From contig NW_027362764.1 of NCBI RefSeq assembly GCF_046119375.1, positions 102,486,001-102,550,000 on the forward strand: a stretch of 64,000 nt of DNA, given 5' to 3'. Under the pieces are notes generated by a model. The model was not told where the DNA came from. It was given only the letters and a program-made list of their open reading frames with translations, and did no database searches. Source of the stretch: Phyllobates terribilis. Lineage: Eukaryota. A program made the position numbers and the translations under genes. Below, piece after piece: positions 26,029 to 39,378 of the stretch. Position 1 is the first letter of the stretch. Every line of letters begins with the position of its first letter.

Positions 26029-26126
26029 CTAATGACAGACTGGAAAAATGCATCTTCTTCTGATGCTGCGAGCAGCCCTGGATAACCCACGCCGGCAGGA
26101 TGATATCATCCGGCGGAAGATGGAAC
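26029..26126 (-). CDS. MAST-like terminal coding exon
   Basis: TCTCTTCTCACAG|[31 protein letters not shown] then TAG (26031-26029). Confidence 0.75.
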
Positions 26127-29100
26127 CTGTGAGAAGAGATGTAAAACTAATGTAAGTAATGGGGCTCCATATTAGGGGATACTGCTGTGGTGTCATGGTG
26201 GCAGGACGGTAAAGGAATTTTATCCGTACAGAGGAATGGGATCATTGTCAGTCATCATACATGTGACAATCCCACCACTGACAGATAACATCTGCTCCAC
26301 ATGAATTATTCTCACTGGCCGACATGAGACAACATAGACCTTATTGTCACACTTACGTCTTCTAGGTTCTTGCTCTTCTACTATTTGGGCGTTTTGCTCT
26401 TCTACCAGTTTTAAAGCAGATTTATTCTTCTTCTCAACTGGAAATTCATATAAAAAAGTCATAAACACAAGTTAATTATCATTTTCAGTTATCATACATG
26501 TGACAATGCCCCCACTGACAGATCACATCTGCTCCACATGGATTATTCTCACTGGCCGACATCAGCCTACATGGAGCTTATTGTCACACTTACCTCTTAT
26601 AGGTTGTCCCTCTTCTACTATTTCTGCTTTTTGCTCTTCTCCCAGTTTTGATGCAGATGTATTATTCTTTTCAACTGGAAATTTATATAAAAAAGCAAGA
26701 AAAATAAGTCAACGATAAACTACTATAAGATTAGATTCATATCTTTATCTAGCAAAATTATTTTATTTTTGTACCCTATAGTCCTGGGAATCTGGCATTG
26801 CACCATAAGGCCTTGTTCACATGAAGCATTTTTGCAGTATTTTTTGCAGCATTTTTTTCATTCAATTTATAAGCTACTTTTTACAGTGAAAGTAAAAGCT
26901 ATGAGATTTCAGAAATCTCATGCAGACATTTGTTTTTTTTTTCCTAACGGGATTTGAAAACTGCAATGTTTTTGAAATCTGCAACATGTCAATTCTTTCA
27001 GCGTTCTTGCAGTGCTTTTTCAACCACAGAAAGCAATGCGCATGCATGGGGAAAGGCCAAAGAGCGTCTGAGCATGCGCACTATAGTACTTTAATCTGCC
27101 CTTAGCAGGGCAGAGAGAAGAGCACCTGCGCAGAAGCAAAATGAAGGACACTCTGTGAATGATATAGGACGCATCATCCACAAAGCAGAGAAGGAGAGCG
27201 GCATCACAGGAAGAGCGGAGGCTCCGGATCAAGACCAGTGACGCCCATCGGACCGGACCGCACCATCTGTGAGTATAATAAAAGGTCTTTATTTTGTTTT
27301 GCAGGGCGGCTTGGAGACTTATATACAACTTTCCAGAATGCTGTAACACAGGGCTGAAAGGTTGTGGTTTTAGGTTATATGGGAAAAATCTGGTGACAGG
27401 TTCTCTTTAATATGACATTAATAACAGCAATGTTCTCATATAATCAATTACATAAAATATTTGTCTAACATTAAGGGTATATGTAGGGTCTGTTTGGGGC
27501 CTGATGGGGCCATGGGCACAGTACTCAGTATCAGTATCAGGCACCAGCTGTATGACCCCTTATATCTTTTCATGCACAGCACAAAAGATTGAGTATTTGA
27601 TACATTGAAGTGTTGTATTGTTGATCGTTTTAAGGGCGCAAAAAAAGCAGTGATCTTCTGAGCATTTATGTAACATTCACATTACACCTTTTGATCATTG
27701 CCTACAACAAGATGTCTTATAGACCTGCACATACCTGACAATGGGGGAGAGGATGACTTGTTGTTTTCAGTAGTCAAACACTGAATGTCACCATCACTTA
27801 TGGTAGGAGAAGATTCTTTCTGCCTGTTTGGTACAAGAAAAACAAATAAATTACAAGTGAATGCAATTAAAAATACAAGAACTCCTGTCTGTAAGGGCAA
27901 TTAAGACACTTGGTCAAAATGGAGGGGATACCTTTCACAGGGCTCACTTCCATCAGCAAGAATGAAGAATAACTAGTAATAAAGGGCTTTAATGAACTGA
28001 AAAAGAAAGGCTGGTCACAATGATCAGCTGTTATCACCAGCGCTATCACAAGCCAAATACCACAGTCATCAGCAATCATGGGGTGGTGGGTTCAGGATTT
28101 AGTCTTGTATCATATGTGTCTTGTATTTGGTGTTCTGAACATATATAAGTACTAAGCCCCATAATAATAATCTACTCACACGTCTGGGTGTTTTGTGCTG
28201 GTCTCTAGGGAACAATCTGGAGATGACTCGCGTTCTTCTTTGCTCATTGTCCTGCTATTGGTTGTATATAGCTAAAACACACAGAGTAAAATTAAATAAA
28301 TATATTTGTAAACAATTTTAGTTACAGTTTTATGGATTTACTGATCACATACTTACCATAGACAGTCTTTGAGAAGAGGATACATAGTTTAAGCTTTCTG
28401 GCCAGTCATTCACCTCACTTGCGTCACCCTCATCTGAATCTGTATGTTTGGGTCTCCTAATGCCAACTACAAAATACAAATATTATCAGAAATTATTAGT
28501 ATAATTACAGATAATCACCATGTTATTGCTAATAATGGACACATTTTTTCAAATAAAATGGAAGACGAGACAAACAGCAGCATGAGCTAGATGACGTCTC
28601 AATCTACTTACTAGGAAAGTAGTGGGTGTCCACCTCTGATACTAGATTTGGCTTAAACAGTGGCTCCTGATTGTGAATGTTCTCAAAGTCTAACTCCCTC
28701 AGGAATGGATGACTCTTGATCTCATTTGCTCCTCCTGAAAATGGTAGATAAGAAAAAATTGATACAGACAATGTCAGGAAGACTGCTCTATATCTGTACA
28801 TTGTATGTTAATTGGAACTGAAGACATTGCAGAGCCAAAATATTCTGTAAGTCATAGCATGAAGAATGAGGAATGGACAAGAAGGTAAAGCAGAGTCCTC
28901 CACGCTGATCCTCACGGAAATTATCTTTTTGTCAGGACACAGAGGAGTTATAAGTTACATTACCTGTTCCGAGTCTATGTGCTGGATTTTTCCTGAGGAG
29001 CTTAATCATGATGTTCTGAGCATCGAGAGGAAGAGCAGAATTGCGAAATTTCCTAGTGATTTCATCTGTTATAAAAAAAAAAGTAATAATTACAGAAAAG

Positions 29101-32100
29101 AAAATCTCTACATTTACTATAATTTAAACACATTATCAAAAAACAACAAATAACTAAACCAAAGAATTAACCTAAAAACCGAACCAGTTACTAGGACATC
29201 ACACAGCATTCAGATTATTTTACTTACTCGTGATGATACTGTGGAAAATAGCACTTCTGCAACGTCCTCTAAATGGCACATGCCCAGTTAGAAATTTATA
29301 TATGATGATCCCTATTGACCACCAGTCAATAGGCCTTCCATAGCCCTTCTGTAAAATGACTTCTGGGGCTACAAAACAAAAGGTGCCAGTCGTCTGGAAA
29401 CCAACAGAACAATGAGAAGATGATCAATGAATATAATTGTGACAAATAATATCAGTAGAAACATTTTCTAGATGAGAATATATCAGAGAAGCAGAAATAG
29501 ATCAGATCTGTAAAGAATAAGTTTCTGTAAGTAAAACTGACCCCATCATCAGGGAACTCTCTGGTGATGTCCACAGTTGAAGCCTTGTATATGTCTGATG
29601 TTGGTCTCATGAGGCCGAGTTTTGAAAGGCCAAAATCGGTGACTTTAATATGTCCAGTTGACGATATCATGAGGCTGTAAAAAAATATATATTGTCAGTT
29701 TTAAGTAATAACCCATAGACAGTATATCAAACTATAACTATATTTCCCTTTATTATCCCACAGGGGTCACTTACTTTCCAGGCTTCAGGTCTCGGTGCAC
29801 CACACCATAGCTGTGCAGATATTCCACAGCAAGAACTGTTTCTGCAATGTACATGCGGGTCAAGGAGAGGGGTAAAGGACTATATAACGTCATAAGACTG
29901 GCACAGTCTCCTCCTAAAGCAGAAAGCAAATATGACAGGTGAGGGTTTGTTACAATGTAAATTACACATGATGAGTGTGAATGAGAGATAAGCTGAGACA
30001 TTGGGGCAGGGTGTCAATAATAGAGATACACTGTGTAATGTAGAGCGTATACTGTATACTGCAGAGTAATCCTATATAAAAAGGGAGGTGAGCTCTGCCC
30101 GCTGCCGGTAACCTCCTAGATTGCACTGTCAATCTCCGACAGCGGCATTTACAGCACACGGCCCGGAGGCGAGCTGCTCCATGCACTCATCACCCCCCAT
30201 TCCATGTCTATGGTTTGTTATGGCTGCTGGGGGTCTGCGGAAGACCTCTATTCCTGCCATTATGGTACTTCTGTGAAGACCAGTGTGTAGCTTGGCTTCA
30301 TAGGGGACCAAGATTTGCACCATATGCTGCAATACCATGGTATCACAGTACATAGTAAAAGCGGTTATATGATAACAAGTTCAAGTCCCTCATGGAGGCT
30401 AAAAAATAAAGTAATAATAAAAATGTTTGGGTAAATAAAATAAAATATAAAAATCACTTTTTCCCCATTAAAACTAAATAATGAAAAAAAAAAAAAAACT
30501 CAGAACACATTGTAGTGTTTTGGTTTCTTCCTATTGCATTTTTTTGTGATGTTGGGGCAATGAAAATGATTTATCTACTACAATGTGTTATCAATAAAAT
30601 CATCAGCTCGCTTAGAAAAAAATAAGACAATAAAAAGCTCCATTTGCTGAAAAAGGAAAATGTAAATTTTCCTTTTTTTTATAAATTTCCAAGGATTTTG
30701 TCAACATAAAATAAAACATATTTATATACATGTTTGGTATGACTGAAATTGTAGTAACTTGTATACTTAAGATACCAGGTCATTTCCATCACACAATGAA
30801 CACTGTAAAAATAAAACTTAAAAAACAATTGCGGAATTGTAATTTTTACATAATTCCACGGCACTTGGATTTTTTCCCCACTTTCTAATACATTCGATGG
30901 TAAAGTGATCAAAACTACAGATGGTTCTACATAAAAACACGTCATGCGGCTATGTGGATGGAAAAATACAAACATTATGGCTCTTGGAAGAATGGGAGGA
31001 AAAAGCGAAAAACGGGAAATTGTCAGGTCAGGAAGAGGTTAAAAAAAATCTGTCAGAAAGATTTAACCCTCCTAAACTGTTTTTCTGAACATGTAGGTCA
31101 ATGAAATATAAATACATTGGTCCCTTTATATATTTGAGCAGATATGGGTTGGATATTGATACAATGGATATGTCTTACCTGCTTCAAAGTCCATGACCAT
31201 ACACAGATGTTCTTTAGTTGGGAAGGAACAAAACGTGGAGACCACAAAGGGACAATCGGAGAATATTGCGATATCCCTTTCTAGATAGGCCGATTCCAGA
31301 AACATTGGATGATGCAGGTTACACCTGGATTGTTTCTTCATGGCGAATACCTTGTTTGTGTCCTTATGACGCACTAAGTGGACGGCCCTGTAGAGGAGAA
31401 AAATCCATAATTTATAATAAATTCCTACTAACAGTCTGTCTATATGTCAAATGATCCTCTGTACTAATAGTTAATACTAGATGTACGGCCATCACTAGAA
31501 ATCAATGTCTGGAAATACATAAAATAACACCACATTAATGATCACTTATGGAGGTTCTCATCCATGTCACATCCCAACTGAGCTGAATAGATGTGGACTA
31601 GATGACTAGATGTGGATTACATCTACTCCAAAGTGGTATCAATAACAACAACAGCTCGCCACACAAAAAGCAAGTCCTTACAAAGCTCTATCGAACGAAA
31701 AATAAAAATGTGACAGGTCTTGGAAAACAGTAACATTTAGATGTGGACTTATATACAGTAATTTCACTATGGCAGGACTTATAGACAGAGGCATCATCAT
31801 AAGCAACTTGTGAAAAATGTAGATTATACAGAAAGCTCACCCAAAAGTTCCACTGCTGATCTCTTTGATCTGGTTATAGTCGCTCTTACTAGGCTTTCTC
31901 ATTGGGCTCAATAATCCAATTACGGCCTAAAAGAATAAGAAATGACAATAAGACATAAAAGTTGCAGGAAAATAAAAAGCTCCAGATGCAGGAACTTCTC
32001 CTCTACATTATGTCCCCACTGATTACACTGCAGCAGATGTAGAGGGCATGATACAAGCAAGACGCTCCACAGACACTATTAAATAATAACGGGATCCGTA

Positions 32101-34440
32101 CTTTTCGGATTATAAGATCCATTCTTTTTCCCAAAAAATTTTTGGGGGAAAAGGGGGGGGGGGGTGTTTTATAATCCGATTGTAGCTTATTGGGAGGGGG
32201 CGGCTGCGGTGGAGCAGGGTCCCAGGAGGAGGGGTTACTGCTGCAAGAAGCTGGCGACGGCAGGAGTGGGGCGATGCTGCAGGCCCCAAGCTGGAAGGAA
32301 GGGGTGTTTGGAGGTGCAAGGCTGCGGAGGGCCGCGGGCTTTAAGAAAATGTCGGCGGAGTCCCAGCACTTCCTATTGTTTTCATTGGGATGGACTTTGG
32401 TAAAATGGCCGCATGCGCAGATTGAGATCTCGGCTCCCCACTCCTGCCGCAGCCAGCATCCTGTAGCAGCAACCCTGCCCCCTGGGACCCCGCTCCACCT
32501 CAGCCGCTCCCCCCCAAAAAGCCACCATAAAATCAGACAATAACAACAATTCATTTTTTACAAAAAATTTCCTCCCCAAAATTTTGGGCGTGTCTTATGG
32601 TCCACAAAATATGGTATATCATTCTACTGCAGCGGAGGATAAGGGACATCACACAGAGGAGACAGGAATAATAATGCTAACATCACTGATAATAACTCCA
32701 ATCTACATCAAGAACAGATATCCCTCTGTCATATGGGGTATAATATGGGATGTGTAATTCATACCCCGTTATCTGATTATATACTTACATTGCCAGATTT
32801 GGGGATCTTTGGTGTCTCACATATTCCCCCATCAGCATTTGCCGGCGGATCAGTTGCCTCTAATATAATGATAAATAATGAAGAGACATCATGTATTAGA
32901 CGATATCAGTACTTAATATATAACACATCATTATAAGGAAGGAAAGATAAGACCTCTGTAAATGGTATAATACTAAATATATGGATATTCTGCACATACT
33001 ATGTATACTTATGGTACATCCATAGATAGATATACTCCACCATAAATGTGTAATAATTGTTCAGGATCTGACAATGACTTGAATGGGGATCCTATGAGGC
33101 TCTTTGTACATTTTAAGGCGTATAATATCCCAGAGGAGAGAACCAGAGGGGTTTTCAGAATGACATGGACCTTCTCCATTATAGTCTACCGGAGGTTCAA
33201 GAGCCGTCACCGGCCTCAAACAGAGGATGAAGAGTAAATTTATATATTCTCGGGTGTCTCTATAATATTAATATGTTTGTAGGAATATGAAATGTTCGGC
33301 TTACCTTCAATCAGATCACTTTTTAGCCCTGGCTGACTGGTATTAGGGTCAGCCATATTTAGGTTCTGCCCATCTTCGGAGTCGCCGTCCGGTGTTTCCT
33401 GATGGATATAATATATACAATTAATATAACATTTCACAAATACTAAATTACCATATACATGAGACAGAAAGGACTAAGTCAGGATTTACATGATAATTGC
33501 AGTATTGCGTGGACTATACACGACCGCTCCCTCCAGTAAGTCCACATTAATATATAAGGGACTAGTATATACAACGGTTCTCCAATAACATCTATTATCA
33601 GAACTGCAGCATTTACAAGAAGGAAGATTGTGAATTTATAGGAAGACAGAGGTGATATACAAAGTCCGCACCACTGAGTACAGACTGTCACCACAGAGGA
33701 TGGAGCCGCAGAGACAGACTGCCATAAATACCCTTCGTCCGCCTGGAGCAGACAGGGAGGCCTCTAAAACAAAAAATCTGCCATTCTGCCATATGTCTGG
33801 TAATCTGGAGAAGATCATACAATAAGGACATGAGATATAGAAGATGAGGGATCCTTACCAGGCGCTCCAGTGAATGGGCCGGATAATCTAGTACATACAG
33901 GAATACGTACAGGACATTTTGGGCCAATTGTTTAAAAAAGGCCAAATCTGCACTTTGGGATCTTTCTTCAGCCTATAAAGATGGAAATAAAGGAAAATAA
34001 TGAGAAAAAGTGGAGAATGTAGGACGCCATTTATGTTACCATTTTACTCCTGCTATCTGCAGCTACAATTACTACCTATCTGGGTATTTGGTATAGACTA
34101 TATATTATATTGGTCTAGGCCAAAATACATATTTTATGTAAATGAACTTGCATTTTGTTAATATTATCCTTTATTATTTTTACACACTTTGCACAGATTG
34201 TCTGCTAATTACCTGTTGTATTAATTTCCTGATGTTCATCTGTAAATGCTCAAGATATTCTGAGCTTATACGACCTTGGTGGTATTTGGTCAGGCAATCT
34301 CTCACTAGCTTCATAACCAGCCGGTAAGTGAAGCTGAGGACGCCATCGGGTAGTGGTAGCACAAAGTCAGGGTCATAGGTAGTAAGAATCCCCTGGAGTA
34401 GTGCCAACTTCTCAAGTTTGTCTGGAGGAATTTCAGACAT
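26029..34440 (-). CDS. MAST: MAST-family (microtubule-associated Ser/Thr) kinase-like gene, 18 coding exons, ~695 aa, no PDZ; family-level call only
   Basis: DUF1908-like N-terminus ([23 protein letters not shown]), AGC kinase domain (SSGTFG, FAMKK, HRDLKPGN, DFG, APE) and AGC tail (DTHYF). Hand-assembled exons sum to 2088 nt in frame with consistent intron phases (assuming a 72-nt exon 3). Confidence 0.88.
26357..26437 (-). CDS. MAST-like exon 17 (81-nt repeat copy 2)
   Basis: TTCCAG|[26 protein letters not shown]|GTAAGT; phase 1-1. Confidence 0.78.
26594..26674 (-). CDS. MAST-like exon 16 (81-nt repeat copy 1)
   Basis: TTCCAG|[26 protein letters not shown]|GTAAGT; phase 1-1. Confidence 0.78.
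27735..27823 (-). CDS. MAST-like exon 15
   Basis: AAACAG|[29 protein letters not shown]|GTATGT; 89 nt, phase 2-1. Confidence 0.78.
28180..28271 (-). CDS. MAST-like exon 14
   Basis: TTTTAG|[30 protein letters not shown]|GTGAGT; 92 nt, phase 0-2. Confidence 0.8.
28357..28466 (-). CDS. MAST-like exon 13
   Basis: TTGTAG|[36 protein letters not shown]|GTAAGT; 110 nt, phase 1-0. Confidence 0.85.
28612..28734 (-). CDS. MAST-like exon 12 (AGC C-tail)
   Basis: TTTCAG|[40 protein letters not shown]|GTAAGT; 123 nt, phase 1-1. Confidence 0.9.
28964..29065 (-). CDS. MAST-like exon 11
   Basis: TAACAG|[33 protein letters not shown]|GTAATG; 102 nt, phase 1-1. Confidence 0.9.
29228..29393 (-). CDS. MAST-like exon 10 (APE; absent from the ORF track)
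   Basis: TTCCAG|[43 protein letters not shown]...SIIT|GTAAGT; 166 nt, phase 0-1. Confidence 0.93.
29542..29674 (-). CDS. MAST-like exon 9 (DFG)
   Basis: TTACAG|[22 protein letters not shown]...TREFPDDG|GTCAGT; 133 nt, phase 2-0. Confidence 0.93.
29775..29913 (-). CDS. MAST-like exon 8 (catalytic loop)
   Basis: CTTTAG|GDCASL...[23 protein letters not shown]|GTAAGT; 139 nt, phase 1-2. Confidence 0.93.
30310..31038. mobile_element. piggyBac-like non-autonomous element in kinase intron 7 (left end unclear)
   Basis: Ends ...GGTCAGGAAGAGG|TTAA (31039-42); AT-rich interior resembling 34629-35490. Confidence 0.5.
31179..31387 (-). CDS. MAST-like exon 7 (subdomains II-V)
   Basis: CTACAG|[18 protein letters not shown]...AYLERDI...[10 protein letters not shown]|GTAAGA; 209 nt, phase 2-1. 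Confidence 0.93.
31841..31926 (-). CDS. MAST-like exon 6 (kinase Gly-loop)
   Basis: TTTTAG|[29 protein letters not shown]|GTGAGC; 86 nt, phase 0-2. Confidence 0.9.
32096..32614. mobile_element. Tc2/Kanga-like MITE in kinase intron 5
   Basis: CCGTACTTTTCGGATTATAAGA ... TCTTATGGTCCACAAAATATGG|TA inverted ends. Confidence 0.75.
32789..32859 (-). CDS. MAST-like exon 5
   Basis: TATTAG|(E)[23 protein letters not shown]|GTAAGT; 71 nt, phase 1-0. Confidence 0.75.
33305..33398 (-). CDS. MAST-like exon 4
   Basis: CATCAG|[32 protein letters not shown]|GTAAGC; 94 nt, phase 0-1. Confidence 0.75.
33692..33763 (-). CDS. MAST-like exon 3 (donor uncertain)
   Basis: TTTTAG|[24 protein letters not shown]; LLQADEG resembles MAST LLEAAEG. 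Donor GTGACA is weak; an alternative phase-0 donor GTAAAT lies near 33616. Confidence 0.5.
33859..33972 (-). CDS. MAST-like exon 2
   Basis: TTATAG|[38 protein letters not shown]|GTAAGG; 114 nt, phase 0-0. Confidence 0.88.
34213..34440 (-). CDS. MAST-like exon 1b (ATG exon)
   Basis: [26 protein letters not shown]...NIRKLIQQ then GTAATT donor, phase 0. If it is instead an internal exon, the acceptor is at 34421. Confidence 0.8.
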
Positions 34441-34628
34441 TTCAAGAAAATCCAATCGCAGTCAATATATCACCAGCTTCGTAGCCAAACACTGACAACA
34501 ATGTCACCGGGGCAGTAAACATTGCATACATAGTGGCTGTGCATTATGATGTCATAATGGAATCTTGTGGTGGAATATTAACATGTCATCAGTGATGTCA
34601 TCATGGAATCCGGTGATGGAATCTTAAC

Positions 34629-35490
34629 CCGTTTACAACCTTGAACATATAGGTACGTCCAAGCTTGTATTTCTGCCTTTTTTAGGCAGCGCCAGAGCCC
34701 ACATCTTTCCCCGCACACAAAAGCTGATGTGCTCAACTGTCATATGCCTCAAATGGACACAGGTGGATCTTGTCTGTTAACTAGTTAAATGCCGTTGTCA
34801 ATCACTGACAACGGCATTTAACACGTGCCAGTCAAAAGTGCATCAAAAGTCCCTCTTATCTGCGCCCCTGTCACGTGATCGCAGGTTGCCGATGTGTTAT
34901 CATGACAGCCGGGGGTCTGCAGAAAATCCCTGTGCCAGTCATTGTTAATTTTTTTATGAATGCCGGCTTGTCGCCGGCGTTTAAAGAAGATTGTGATTTC
35001 TGATATACATAGCATTGCTGAAGCCCCGGATGATCGCTGCTTCAAATCTCCTAAGGTGGCTATTGAAGCTAGTAACAAAAAAAAAACACAAAAGTTCAAA
35101 TCGCACCCCTTTTGCCTCATTGGAAATAAAACAATTGAAAAATATAAAAAAAACATATTTGGTATCACTGTGTTTAGAAATGTCCAATCTGTCAAAATAT
35201 AAGCTAAATTAATTAATCTGTAAATGGCGTAACCAGAAGACAATCAAAATGCCACAATTACGTTTTTTTGGCCGATGCAACATTGCAATAAAATGTAACA
35301 ACATGCGATCAAAATATCCTATCTACACTAAAATGGTATAAATAAAAATGGAAGCTCAGGGCTCAAAAAAACAAGCCATCACCAAGCCCCAAATCCCAAA
35401 AAATGGAGACGCTACGGGTCTCTGAAAATGGGGACATAAGCTAATTTTTTTTTCTTACTAAGTCGGATTTTTTTTTCACCACTTAAATAA
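34629..35490. mobile_element. piggyBac-like non-autonomous element between exons 1a and 1b
   Basis: Starts at TTAA|CCCGTTTACAACC, exactly where homology between the two duplicated blocks ends. Confidence 0.5.
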
Positions 35491-35534
35491 AAAAAGAACT
35501 TATAGCTTGTATTTTATGAATATTATCTTCTTAC

Positions 35535-35762
35535 CTGTCGTACTAGTGTCCTGATGTTCATCTGTAAATGCTCAAGATATTCTGAGCTTATACGACCTTG
35601 GTGGTATTTGGTCAGGCAATCTCTCACTAGCTCCATAACCAGCCGGTAAGTGAAGCTGAGGACGCCATCGGGTAGTGGCAGCACAAAGTCAGGGTCATAG
35701 GTAGTAACAATCCCCTGGAGTAGTGCCAACTTCTCAAGTTTGACTGGAGAAATTCCAGACAT
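35535..35762 (-). CDS. MAST-like exon 1a (duplicated ATG exon)
   Basis: [37 protein letters not shown]...NIRTLVRQ then GTAAGA donor, phase 0. Confidence 0.7.
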
Positions 35763-37649
35763 TTCAAGCAAATAGCAAATCCAATCGCAGTCAGTATATC
35801 ACCAGCTATAAAGCCAATCACTAACAGCAATGACACCGGGGCAGTAAGCACTTGAATAAATGCTGGGGGTGCATTATGATGTCATGATGGAATCTTGTGG
35901 TGGGGGAATCAGTGATGTCATTTAGGAATCCGGTGATGCAATCTTAAAGGGGCATCTTACCATAAAAGGACGTTGCCTAGCAACAATTAAGGTGGCAACA
36001 CCATAGGCTGAGCATCAGTAACAGACTGAGGCATGGGAAGAAGAACCATGGCTTTGATCAGTAGGGCAGGCTTTTACATCTGTCTGTTCCCCCATAAAAT
36101 ATTTAAAACAGAGTTTGGATGCTAAATGTTCTTCAGACGTGGAAACATTTGCTTTTTCTAGAGATTATGACCAGGGATGGACTGGGAATAAAATACAGTC
36201 CTGGAATTTCAAAGCATGCTAGTCCATGCTGTCGCCGCCCCTCTCCCCAGATTGGGGTCTCTGATACTAATTTTATGCTGCCTGAATGAAATTAAGATTT
36301 ACTAAATATATTTCCAATAATACTGCTTTATTGGATTTCATAATAATAATATTGCAAAATAAGGTTATGTTTTTACAATGAGGTTTTGCTAAGTATTTTC
36401 GCTGAAATCCACAACATACAGAATCAATTTCTTTTGCAATTATGCGGAGCTTTGTATGCAGATTTTCTCTATAGAATTGCATTAGATGAGGAAAATACGC
36501 TGGTTAAAAATACAAAGCGCATAAAATCCACACATGACTCGATCATTAAAGTTTTATTAAAGTACGAGGAAGTATCAAAAATAAAGCAGATTCATTCAAT
36601 ATGGTCGGTGGAGGGCTTAATAGTCGCCTTGTGGAAGTCAATGACGGGCTTAATAGTGCTGCAGTGTCCAGAAACAGTTCCAGGACTTTTAGACTGAGGC
36701 CCCCCTTTCTTCCACTATAGAGAGGGAAATATGTGTATAAGAGCATCCCAGAAGGGTTCCAAAAGTTTGGGTGAAATATATACCAAAGAGACAACAACCG
36801 CAGAGTCAAAAAGAGACAAAAATGCAATAAAAAGGCAAGTAACCTAATGTACTGAATAGGTGGAGAAATGCAGCAGAATGCTGCAACGTCAAAAACTCAT
36901 CAACTACTCATCATGGGAACTTAACCTAACAAACACATAGTACCAGAGCAGATCCAAATATTACCAGAATATACAGTGGTGATAGTGCCGCCATATTGAT
37001 CATTAACCAAAACCAATGTACTAGTACTGATGTCACCACCATACAGTGTCCATATAATGGTACTATCAGTTTTACACCAGTGCTCTTCAGACCATATATG
37101 TGTGCACTGTGCAGGTTTTCACCAGTGACGTTCTCAATGATCGCGGTCATTCATTTTTCCTTTCCTTTTCCATTCGGCCTAAAACGCCATGATCACTTCT
37201 TCAACCCATAACTCGTCCCTGCAAAATGTAACACAGACACCTCTTTGACTTACTCCCCCATTTCTGTACAAACCATGTATTGCAATAATGAGTATCCTAG
37301 ACAGTAATAAAGCCCCTCTGTGTCCTGTATGGTAATACTAATCTCCTTTTGTGTCCCACACAATACCAGTTTCACCCTTCATGCCCCTATACAGTAATAA
37401 TGATCCCTCTGTACTTGCTTAGAGTAACTATCAGTACTGATAGTGGGGCCGTGGCCTTATAGAAACAACTCACCAATTCTGCATTTGTCACCCACTCCTG
37501 GTTTTGGCTTCCACTCCTGAGAAAAAATACTGACCGAATACTGACCAAATACTGATAGTGGGGCCGTGGCCTAAAGGTCAGTCTGTAAGAAGAAAGTGAG
37601 TCTAGGAAAATAAAAGAAAGGCATACTTACTATTCTTTAACGTAAAACC

Positions 37650-38234: not shown

Positions 38235-39378
38235 CAGCGGGTGAAATAAGTATTTCACCCGCTGTATATATACAGTTTTCTAAGTAAATATATTTCTGAA
38301 GGTGCTATTGACATGAAATTCTCACCAGATGACAATAACAACCCATCCAATCCACACAGGCAAAGAAATCAAACCATAGATGTCCATAAATTAAGTCATG
38401 TGTAATAATGAGAAATGACACAGGGAATAAGTATTGAACATGCTTATTGAAATGTATTTAATACTTCATACAAAAGCCTTTATTGGTGATGACAGCTTCA
38501 AGACGCCTCCTGTATGAAGAAACTAGTAGCATGCATTGCTCAGGTGTGATTTTGGCCCATTCTTCCACACAAACACTCTACAACTCCTGAAGGTTCCATT
38601 GGCGTCTTCTATGAACTCTGAGCTTTGGTTCCTTCCATACATTTTCTATTGGATTCTGGTCAGGTGATTGGCTCGGCCATTCTAGCAGCTTTATTTTCTT
38701 TCTCTGAAACCTATTGAGAGTTTCCTTGGCAGTGTGTTTGGGTTCATTGTCTTGCTGAAATGTCCAACCCCATTTCATCTTCATCATCCTGGTAGATGCC
38801 AGCAGATTTTCATCAAGAATGTCTCAGCACATTTGTCCATTCATCCTTCCTTTTAAATATATGAAGCTTGCCAGAGCCGTAAGCTGAACAACCCCAGATG
38901 ATGTTCTCACCTCCAGTTTTCACTGTTGGTAAGGTGTTTTCGGGATGATGTGCAGTGCCTCTTGGCCTTCAAATATGTTGGGTATTATGGCATTCAAAGA
39001 GTTCAATTTTCATCTCATCTGACAAAACTACATTCTCCCAGTCTTTCACAGGCTTGTCTAAATTTTGTTGAGCAAACTTTAAATATGCTTGAACATACTT
39101 TTTGTTCAGCAATGAAGTCTTGCGTGGTGACATGCATACAGGCCATGGATGTTGAGTGCATTACTTATTGTTTTATTTGAAACAATTGTACCTGCTGATT
39201 CCAGGTCTTTCTGTATCTCCCCACAGGTGTTCCTTGGCTCTTGGACAACCCTTTTGATTCGTTTTACTCCTCTGTCTGAAATCTTGTGGGGTGCACGTGG
39301 TCATGGCCAGTTCATAGTAAAATGATGATCTTTCCACTTCGGGATTATGGCCCCAACAGTGCTCACTGGAACCTTCAA
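38235..39378 (-). mobile_element. Tc1 remnant (3' TIR plus C-terminal transposase)
   Basis: TA|CAGCGGGTGAAATAAGTATT; [25 protein letters not shown]. Confidence 0.85.

What the first reader, a model, noticed from the sequence alone, without database searches (positions are those of the whole stretch)
34213..35946. Duplicated first coding exon plus ~190 bp of upstream sequence: twin start modules
Blocks 34210-34628 and 35530-35946 are paralogous. Each has an in-frame ATG, 76 open codons and a phase-0 GT donor. The obvious internal acceptor in 1b (34421) is phase 1, so joining 1a to 1b there would frameshift. The copies therefore look like alternative first exons. Homology stops at a TTAA in both blocks, with a piggyBac-like insert after one.
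Basis: partly seen in the sequence, partly recalled or inferred. Interest (0 to 1): 0.7.

Follow-up and report, generated by a model that had tools for sequence, protein, structure and literature searches.

The report
Duplicated start exon of frog kinase
A poison-frog gene for a shortened MAST-type protein kinase carries two intact copies of its first coding exon, each with about 190 bases of conserved upstream DNA; they are probably alternative starts, a well-known arrangement, but no RNA data could be obtained to prove it.

Summary
Minus-strand blocks 34197-34628 (A) and 35522-35947 (B) are paralogous. Each has an ATG, 76 open codons and a phase-0 GT donor.

The exon encodes the first helices of the DUF1908 bundle of a compact, PDZ-less MAST-like kinase, whose gene body lies at 26032-33972. 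All relatives found start at this same Met. No upstream coding exon was found in the 28 kb of window above it, so this is a first coding exon.

The duplicated ~190 nt upstream block aligns with the leader of a 52%-identical homologue's transcript, and both copies keep its two ATGACATCA boxes.

In Ranitomeya variabilis, five genes of this family have RefSeq isoform pairs that differ only in residues 1-76.

dN/dS between the copies is about 1.2 on ten changes. The exon centre is 98% identical against 86% upstream, with too few synonymous changes, which points to gene conversion. Intactness therefore does not prove that both copies are used.

The piggyBac idea is not supported: there are no terminal inverted repeats and no second TTAA.

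Earlier notes of this scan had already found this kinase family on other pieces of the same genome.

Verdict: a new member of a known kind, of modest interest.

The parts
35522..35947 (-). Unit B (distal copy): upstream block, first coding exon 1B, donor, and about 13 nt of intron
   Evidence: Gapped local alignment with unit A; repeat families D1-D4
35763..35947 (-). Upstream block of B (185 nt from TTAA to ATG). Holds two ATGACATCA boxes (35877-35885, 35913-35921) and a 7-nt tandem duplication just before the ATG
   Evidence: 86% identical to the A block; alignable to the leader of homologue L002, z = 15 against shuffles; boxes located
35535..35762 (-). Exon 1B coding part: ATG plus 76 codons; donor GT at 35534-35533 (CAG|GTAAGA)
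   Evidence: Translation; Pfam DUF1908 E = 1.2e-9; donor context
34629..35521 (.). Spacer between the copies. Unique in the window, with no long ORF of note. Holds a perfect 17-nt inverted repeat at 34784-34822
   Evidence: blastn finds only self-hits; no terminal inverted repeats; no homology to the L002 leader
34197..34628 (-). Unit A (proximal copy): upstream block, first coding exon 1A, donor, and about 16 nt of intron 1
34441..34628 (-). Upstream block of A (188 nt from TTAA to ATG). Holds ATGACATCA boxes at 34547-34555 and 34593-34601, and nine upstream ATGs, the nearest at -82
34213..34440 (-). Exon 1A coding part: ATG plus 76 codons; donor GT at 34212-34211 (CAG|GTAATT)
   Evidence: Translation; Pfam DUF1908 E = 5e-10, profile positions 142-202 of 281; matches residues 21-82 of the solved MAST1 helical domain 2m9x
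33859..33972 (-). Shared exon 2 (38 codons, phase 0 at both ends) with a strong acceptor (long pyrimidine tract then TATAG|GCTGAAG). It completes the DUF1908 helical bundle
   Evidence: ORF scan; tblastn with P0002 residues 77-103; junction contexts
26032..33858 (-). Rest of the compact MAST-like kinase gene: about 14 further exons, kinase domain with HRDLKPGN and DFG motifs, repeat-rich tail and a conserved basic C-terminus. No PDZ domain
   Evidence: tblastn with Ranitomeya variabilis P0002, P0152 and others and with canonical MAST proteins, whose matches end near residue 836; catalytic-loop junction

Best explanation
A local duplication of about 430 bp copied the 'start module' of a compact, PDZ-less MAST-like kinase gene and placed the copy about 1.3 kb upstream of the original. 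The module is the family's conserved ~190-nt proximal upstream block, the first coding exon (ATG plus 76 codons, the first helices of the DUF1908 bundle) and the 5' splice site.

Shown: both copies keep the boxes, the ATG, the open frame and the donor, and neither has an upstream coding exon.

Inferred: each copy is transcribed from its own proximal promoter. Its donor then joins the single strong acceptor of exon 2 at 33972, skipping the other copy, which has no proper acceptor. This would give two kinase isoforms that differ at 8 of the first 76 residues. It is the variable-first-exon arrangement known from protocadherin and UGT1A clusters, here at its minimal two-exon stage.

The centre of the exon has most likely been homogenised between the copies by gene conversion after the duplication.
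For: - The duplication is real and both copies are intact.
- The exon is DUF1908 of a MAST-like kinase, and the gene body is intact downstream.
- All 40-odd dendrobatoid relatives start at the same Met. A stop lies upstream in frame in both copies. Canonical MAST N-terminal parts find nothing in the 28 kb above.
- The upstream block is alignable to the transcript leader of a 52%-identical homologue (z = 12-15), while the flanks beyond the TTAA are not. Both copies keep two ATGACATCA boxes, which occur 7 times in the window against 1.1 expected.
- That homologue's RNA contig runs collinear with the block for at least 547 nt upstream of the ATG, so no acceptor is used there.
- In R. variabilis, five family genes have RefSeq isoform pairs identical after residue 76 and different in residues 1-76, with 4, 11, 11, 24 and 24 differences: P0158/P0240, P0194/P0199, P0196/P0197, P0183/P0237 and P0236/P0239.
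- A and B are each other's nearest relatives in the exon-1 tree, support 92/84.
Against:
- dN/dS between the copies is about 1.2 (8 non-synonymous, 2 synonymous changes), which gives no sign of purifying selection.
- The low divergence of the exon centre (3/192 against 25/176 upstream) also covers synonymous sites (1 seen, 6.3 expected, P = 0.013). This fits gene conversion better than selection, so intactness is weak evidence that both copies are used.
- The homologue's transcript leader extends at least 547 nt upstream of its ATG. The true start site may therefore lie outside the 190-nt block that was duplicated, in which case B would lack the original promoter.
- The RefSeq isoforms of the relative are computed models, and I could not inspect their support or their DNA.
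Confidence: 0.5

Rival explanations
1. Only one copy is used and the other is a silent relic of a partial gene duplication. The used copy is most likely A, which is contiguous with the gene. The relic would look intact only because gene conversion from the active copy keeps refreshing its centre.
For: dN/dS is about 1.2. There is a deficit of synonymous differences in the exon centre and a sharp jump in identity from 80% to 98%, both typical of conversion. Changes in the upstream block fall evenly on both lineages and are not depleted at sites shared with the outgroup. The homologue's leader is longer than the duplicated block.
Against: Both copies keep the ATG, the donor and both conserved boxes in the flanks that were not homogenised. 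Relatives have annotated alternative first exons of exactly this kind. A transcribed upstream copy with a good donor (CAG|GTAAGA) would splice to exon 2 by default.
Confidence: 0.3
2. Transcripts that start at B splice into A. If they use the CCTCCAG|AC acceptor at 34421, the frame shifts and the transcript is a decay target. If they use an in-frame AG such as CTCCAG|GGG after codon 16, the protein has a tandemly repeated half-domain.
For: The cryptic acceptor exists in A with a short pyrimidine run. A RefSeq model of Anomaloglossus baeobatrachus (P0001) joins two copies of this exon in frame through an internal acceptor, and also repeats exons 2-4.
Against: These AGs lie in purine-rich coding sequence and are much weaker than the exon 2 acceptor. 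The two repeats in P0001 are identical in protein, so that model may reflect a very young duplication or an assembly or prediction artefact.
Confidence: 0.08
3. Both copies are internal exons entered from an untranslated or coding exon further upstream, that is, mutually exclusive duplicated exons rather than first exons.
For: The exon matches the middle of the Pfam DUF1908 profile, positions 142-202 of 281. An AG with a moderate pyrimidine run lies about 60 nt before each ATG (TTGTCAG / TGTTAG).
Against: There is an in-frame stop upstream of each ATG. No N-terminal MAST coding sequence occurs anywhere upstream in the window. Every relative's model starts at this Met. The solved helical domain starts only about 20 residues before the match. 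The homologue's RNA is collinear through the region and lacks that AG.
Confidence: 0.07
4. Assembly artefact: two alleles or two paralogues were stitched in tandem.
For: The family is large and recently amplified, which invites mis-assembly. No reads could be laid on the stretch.
Against: The copies differ by 14% plus indels upstream, far above allelic levels. They are separated by unique sequence and have different flanks on both sides.
Confidence: 0.05

Closest known systems
Variable (alternative) first-exon clusters, for example clustered protocadherins and UGT1A (from my own knowledge of the literature: Wu and Maniatis 1999; Zhang et al. 2004, Genome Research)
   Same: Paralogous first exons arose by tandem duplication. 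Each carries its own copy of a conserved upstream element and its own 5' splice site, none has a 3' splice site, and all lie upstream of one shared acceptor.
   Different: There are only two copies here. The copies are young, differing at 8 of 76 residues. The product is a cytoplasmic kinase whose variable part is half of a helical bundle. Promoter choice and transcripts were not shown here.
RefSeq isoform pairs of MAST4-like genes in Ranitomeya variabilis (for example LOC143781772 X1/X2, XP_077124704/XP_077124705)
   Same: Same gene family. The isoforms are identical from residue 77 on and differ only in the 76-residue first coding exon.
   Different: Those pairs differ by 4-24 residues. The alternative exon of LOC143781772 is closest to the first exon of another gene (P0174), not to its partner. 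Their DNA could not be fetched, so spacing and upstream blocks are unknown.
Canonical MAST1-4 kinases
   Same: The DUF1908 helical domain is followed by an AGC-type kinase domain. The exon border after LLQ(E/Q) and the catalytic motifs are kept.
   Different: The N-terminal 300+ residues and the first half of the Pfam DUF1908 profile are missing, as are the PDZ domain and the long tail. The protein is about 700 aa. The family is expanded in dendrobatoid frogs.

Membership tests
Variable / alternative first-exon gene architecture | Two or more paralogous first exons in tandem upstream of shared downstream exons | tested here: met
   Units A and B lie upstream of the single exon 2 at 33972. There is no other copy of exons 2-16 in the window.
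Variable / alternative first-exon gene architecture | Each first exon carries its own promoter or conserved upstream element | tested here: inconclusive
   A conserved ~190-nt block with two ATGACATCA boxes was duplicated with the exon. Promoter activity and start sites could not be tested, and the homologue's leader is longer than the block.
Variable / alternative first-exon gene architecture | Each first exon has a 5' splice site and no used 3' splice site | tested here: inconclusive
   Donors CAG|GTAAGA and CAG|GTAATT are present. Only cryptic AGs exist inside the exon, and whether they are used is unknown.
Variable / alternative first-exon gene architecture | Transcripts exist that join each first exon to the common exon | not testable with these tools
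No transcript-derived proteins were found.
MAST kinase family | DUF1908 helical domain | tested here: met
   Pfam PF08926 E = 5e-10, above the gathering score. PDB 2m9x E = 2e-14. Only the second half of the Pfam profile is present.
MAST kinase family | AGC-type kinase domain with catalytic motifs | tested here: met
   tblastn with canonical MAST proteins gives 50-70% identity over the kinase exons. HRDLKPGN is formed across a splice junction and DFG is present.
MAST kinase family | PDZ domain after the kinase domain | tested here: not met
   Matches of 2000-2500-aa MAST proteins stop near residue 800-836, and no PDZ-region hit occurs in the window.
piggyBac-type transposon insertion | TTAA target duplication on both sides, and terminal inverted repeats | tested here: not met
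   TTAA occurs at one end of the spacer only. No inverted repeat joins the spacer ends. The reverse complement of the CCC end is not found elsewhere with up to 3 mismatches.
Mutually exclusive duplicated internal exons | Both copies have functional acceptors and are entered from an upstream coding exon | tested here: not met
   There is an in-frame stop upstream of each ATG and no upstream coding exon in the window. Relatives start at this Met.

The most novel reading that the evidence does not exclude
Repeated duplication of the 'promoter block plus first exon' module may be a family-wide habit of the frog-only compact MAST-like kinases. It is seen at this locus and is annotated at five or more Ranitomeya genes. 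It would create variable-first-exon clusters that put different N-terminal halves of the DUF1908 bundle under separate promoters. That would be a protocadherin/UGT1A-style diversification applied to a signalling kinase, kept partly uniform by gene conversion.
Probability: 0.3. Interest if true: 0.5.

Novelty: new member of a known kind. Interest (0 to 1): 0.35.

Why it matters
If both starts are used, this is a very young example of how a variable-first-exon gene is born. One small duplication yields a second promoter and a second N-terminus without copying the rest of the gene. It lies in a rapidly expanding, frog-restricted kinase family that, as far as my searches go, no paper describes. 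It would also show that this family diversifies the first helices of its DUF1908 domain in particular. If only one start is used, it is an ordinary partial duplicate kept similar by gene conversion.

Tried and rejected
- **Transcript-derived proteins of this species.** Three word searches covering lengths 42-133, 137-436 and 393-1251 aa found only NCBI models of Ranitomeya and Anomaloglossus.
- **DNA of the relatives' loci.** It was not fetchable because the assembly files are too large, or there was no record. I therefore could not check whether the relatives' alternative exons carry their own upstream blocks.
- **piggyBac or other transposon origin of the spacer.** Rejected.
- **Tandem duplication of a larger segment, or a deleted upstream gene copy.** Rejected, because the spacer matches neither the sequence above B, nor intron 1, nor anything downstream of the gene.
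- **Homology of A's flank beyond the TTAA to the homologue (a shared GGGTTAA).** Not above shuffles.
- **A and B as descendants of two older paralogue lineages.** Dropped. They share the derived LEK at codons 9-11 and are sisters in the tree.
- **Papers.** No hit for MAST4-like plus frog, or for the run accession. One search timed out and one was malformed.
- **Joined spliced model.** Exons were searched separately by reference.
Full report
**What is there.**
Reading 33700-36400 and running the repeat finder shows two collinear blocks on the minus strand. The core is 34209-34451 against 35531-35773 at 95% identity, followed by three shorter blocks at 86-90%. blastn of block A finds B at E = 2e-140 and nothing else in the 64 kb. 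A gapped local alignment puts the limits at 34197-34628 (A) and 35522-35947 (B).

In gene orientation each unit runs as follows:
- a TTAA, then 188 nt (A) or 185 nt (B) of upstream sequence;
- an ATG (34440 in A, 35762 in B) and 76 codons without a stop;
- a phase-0 donor, CAG|GTAATT in A and CAG|GTAAGA in B;
- about 13-16 nt of intron, after which similarity ends.

**What the exon is.**
Both peptides hit Pfam DUF1908 (PF08926) above its gathering score, at profile positions 142-202 of 281. Residues 14-75 align to residues 21-82 of the 112-residue solved helical domain of MAST1 (2m9x) and to the MAST3 domain 1v9v. Exon 1 plus the 38-codon exon 2 (33859-33972) therefore make up nearly the whole structured bundle.

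tblastn with the closest full-length relative maps about 16 exons from 34440 (or 35762) down to 26032. That relative is Ranitomeya variabilis XP_077127999, 715 aa (P0002). Only exon 1 is present twice. The kinase exons are intact, and the catalytic loop reads HRDLKPGN across a splice junction.

Canonical 2000-2500-aa MAST proteins match only from this exon to the end of the kinase region. Neither their N-terminal 300 residues nor their PDZ region match anywhere in the window, including the 28 kb upstream.

**Is it a first exon?**
An exhaustive HMMER search and two word searches found some 40 distinct relatives. All are from the dendrobatoid frogs Ranitomeya variabilis, R. imitator and Anomaloglossus baeobatrachus, plus one unnamed homologue seen in Logan contigs. 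Nearly all of these models start at the same Met; P0169, P0172, P0179 and P0184 have other N-terminal starts.

In both copies an in-frame stop lies 7-12 codons above the ATG.

A Logan contig of the 52%-identical homologue (L001, run SRR5149441) is clearly RNA. All introns but the first are removed, and it ends in AATAAA signals. It runs collinear with the genomic-type upstream sequence for 547 nt above the ATG, so no acceptor is used there. I conclude this is a true first coding exon, not an internal one.

**The upstream block.**
The ~190 nt between the TTAA and the ATG in A and B align to the leader of that homologue far better than shuffled sequence does (z = 12 and 15). The flanks beyond the TTAA do not.

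Two boxes containing ATGACATCA are kept in all three sequences. This 9-mer occurs 7 times in the window against 1.1 expected, and 4 of those lie in the two units. From general knowledge, it is one step from the CRE octamer TGACGTCA. That is an inference, not a test.

The duplicated unit thus coincides with the family's conserved proximal block plus exon plus donor, which is what a 'start module' should contain.

Two cautions apply. The homologue's transcript starts at least 547 nt upstream, so the start site may lie outside the block that was copied. If transcribed in full, A's block also has nine upstream ATGs.

**Evidence from relatives.**
Among the R. variabilis RefSeq proteins I found five isoform pairs of single genes that are identical from residue 77 to the end and differ only within residues 1-76:

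| Pair | Differences in residues 1-76 |
|---|---|
| P0158/P0240 | 4 |
| P0194/P0199 | 11 |
| P0196/P0197 (LOC143781772 X1/X2) | 11 |
| P0183/P0237 | 24 |
| P0236/P0239 | 24 |

NCBI's pipeline therefore already models alternative first coding exons in this family. The A/B pair here, with 8 differences, falls inside that range. These are computed models. I could not fetch their DNA or see their support.

One Anomaloglossus model (P0001) instead strings two copies of the exon, and two copies of exons 2-4, into one reading frame. This shows that such partial duplications recur, and that read-through is at least conceivable.

**Selection or conversion?**
Within the 228 coding nt there are 10 differences, 8 non-synonymous and 2 synonymous. 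dN/dS is about 1.2, no different from neutral.

The differences are not evenly spread:
- codons 8-71 have 3 differences in 192 nt (1.6%);
- the upstream block has 25 in 176 aligned nt (14%) plus 18 gap columns (Fisher P = 4e-6);
- the first 7 codons have 3 differences and the last 5 codons have 4.

Synonymous sites share the deficit: 1 change seen in the centre against 6.3 expected at the upstream rate (P = 0.013). Purifying selection on the protein alone does not explain that. Gene conversion of the exon centre after an older duplication does.

In the exon-1 tree A and B are sisters with support 92/84, which fits either a local duplication or conversion. Against the Ranitomeya outgroups both copies carry derived amino-acid changes, by my reading of the N-termini listed: E3, P5, K44, K72 and I74 in A, and V7, V19 and R75 in B. 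In the upstream block, changes fall about equally on both lineages, 8 and 10.

So the sequence does not show that either copy is decaying. Equally, because of conversion, it does not prove that both are used.

**Origin.**
The 893-nt spacer is unique in the window and matches neither the sequence above B, intron 1, nor the gene's 3' flank. That rules out a simple larger tandem duplication or a collapsed upstream gene copy.

The spacer has no terminal inverted repeats and no TTAA at its B-side end. The reverse complement of its TTAA-CCC end occurs nowhere else, even with three mismatches. The piggyBac suggestion is therefore unsupported.

The TTAA is also the first four bases of a ~46-nt sub-repeat that occurs twice inside each block. 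It belongs to the conserved block and is not a transposon target site.

**What could not be done.**
The decisive test is junction reads and 5' ends. I followed the instruction to move on and did not resend a trimmed stretch.

Earlier notes of this scan name the genome as the golden poison frog (s1-215396). They also report that the compact MAST-like family was seen on other pieces of this genome and is transcribed there (s1-217961, s1-224844). I did not verify the species name. I did verify the family and its distribution independently.

**Verdict.**

| Reading | Confidence |
|---|---|
| Two-member variable-first-exon arrangement | about 0.5 |
| One copy is an unused relic refreshed by gene conversion | about 0.3 |
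| B splices into A | about 0.08 |
| Both are internal exons | about 0.07 |
| Assembly artefact | about 0.05 |

The arrangement is a known kind, its relatives are already modelled this way in RefSeq, and function is untested. Interest is modest (0.35).

Noticed in passing
window 33900-33935 (minus strand, exon 2): Exon 2 carries an in-frame 12-nt tandem duplication (CTGTACGTATTC / CTGTATGTACTA, peptide LYVF-LYVL) that the Ranitomeya homologues (NVLLVLEYP) lack. It lies inside the last helix region of the DUF1908 bundle.
   Followed up: partly
window 35769-35782 (minus strand): Copy B has a 7-nt tandem duplication (ATTTGCT ATTTGCT) in the leader, about 7 nt before its ATG. Copy A has one unit.
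   Followed up: no
window 34784-34822: A perfect 17-nt inverted repeat with a 5-nt loop (GTTAAATGCCGTTGTCA / TGACAACGGCATTTAAC) lies in the spacer, with TTAA in both arms. Meaning unknown; it could be a small footprint or a hairpin.
   Followed up: no
L001:1-2986 (Logan contig of SRR5149441; also L002, L003 from two other runs): The transcript of a 52%-identical homologue retains intron 1 while all later introns are removed. It has a leader of at least 547 nt with several upstream ATGs. The same form was assembled in three runs with 5' ends within 30 nt of each other. The species of these runs was not identified.
   Followed up: partly
Protein P0001 (Anomaloglossus baeobatrachus XP_075207781): This gene model contains the first exon 1.9 times and exons 2-4 twice, in frame, with identical protein repeats. 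It is either a very young internal duplication or an assembly or prediction artefact.
   Followed up: no
window 29780-29800 / 29676 (minus strand): The catalytic loop reads HRDLKPGN (Gly where MAST kinases have Glu or Asp), formed across a phase-2 splice junction. The catalytic Asp and Asn are kept.
   Followed up: no
window about 38460-39300 (minus strand): Broken Tc1/mariner-type transposase reading frames (for example a [10 protein letters not shown]...[17 protein letters not shown] stretch) lie about 2.5 kb upstream of copy B.
   Followed up: no
window 26340-26700 (minus strand): The C-terminal coding region holds tandem copies of a roughly 27-residue unit (VEKKN.SALKL.EEQ...IVEE). The copy number differs among the Ranitomeya isoforms (715, 769 aa and others).
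   Followed up: no
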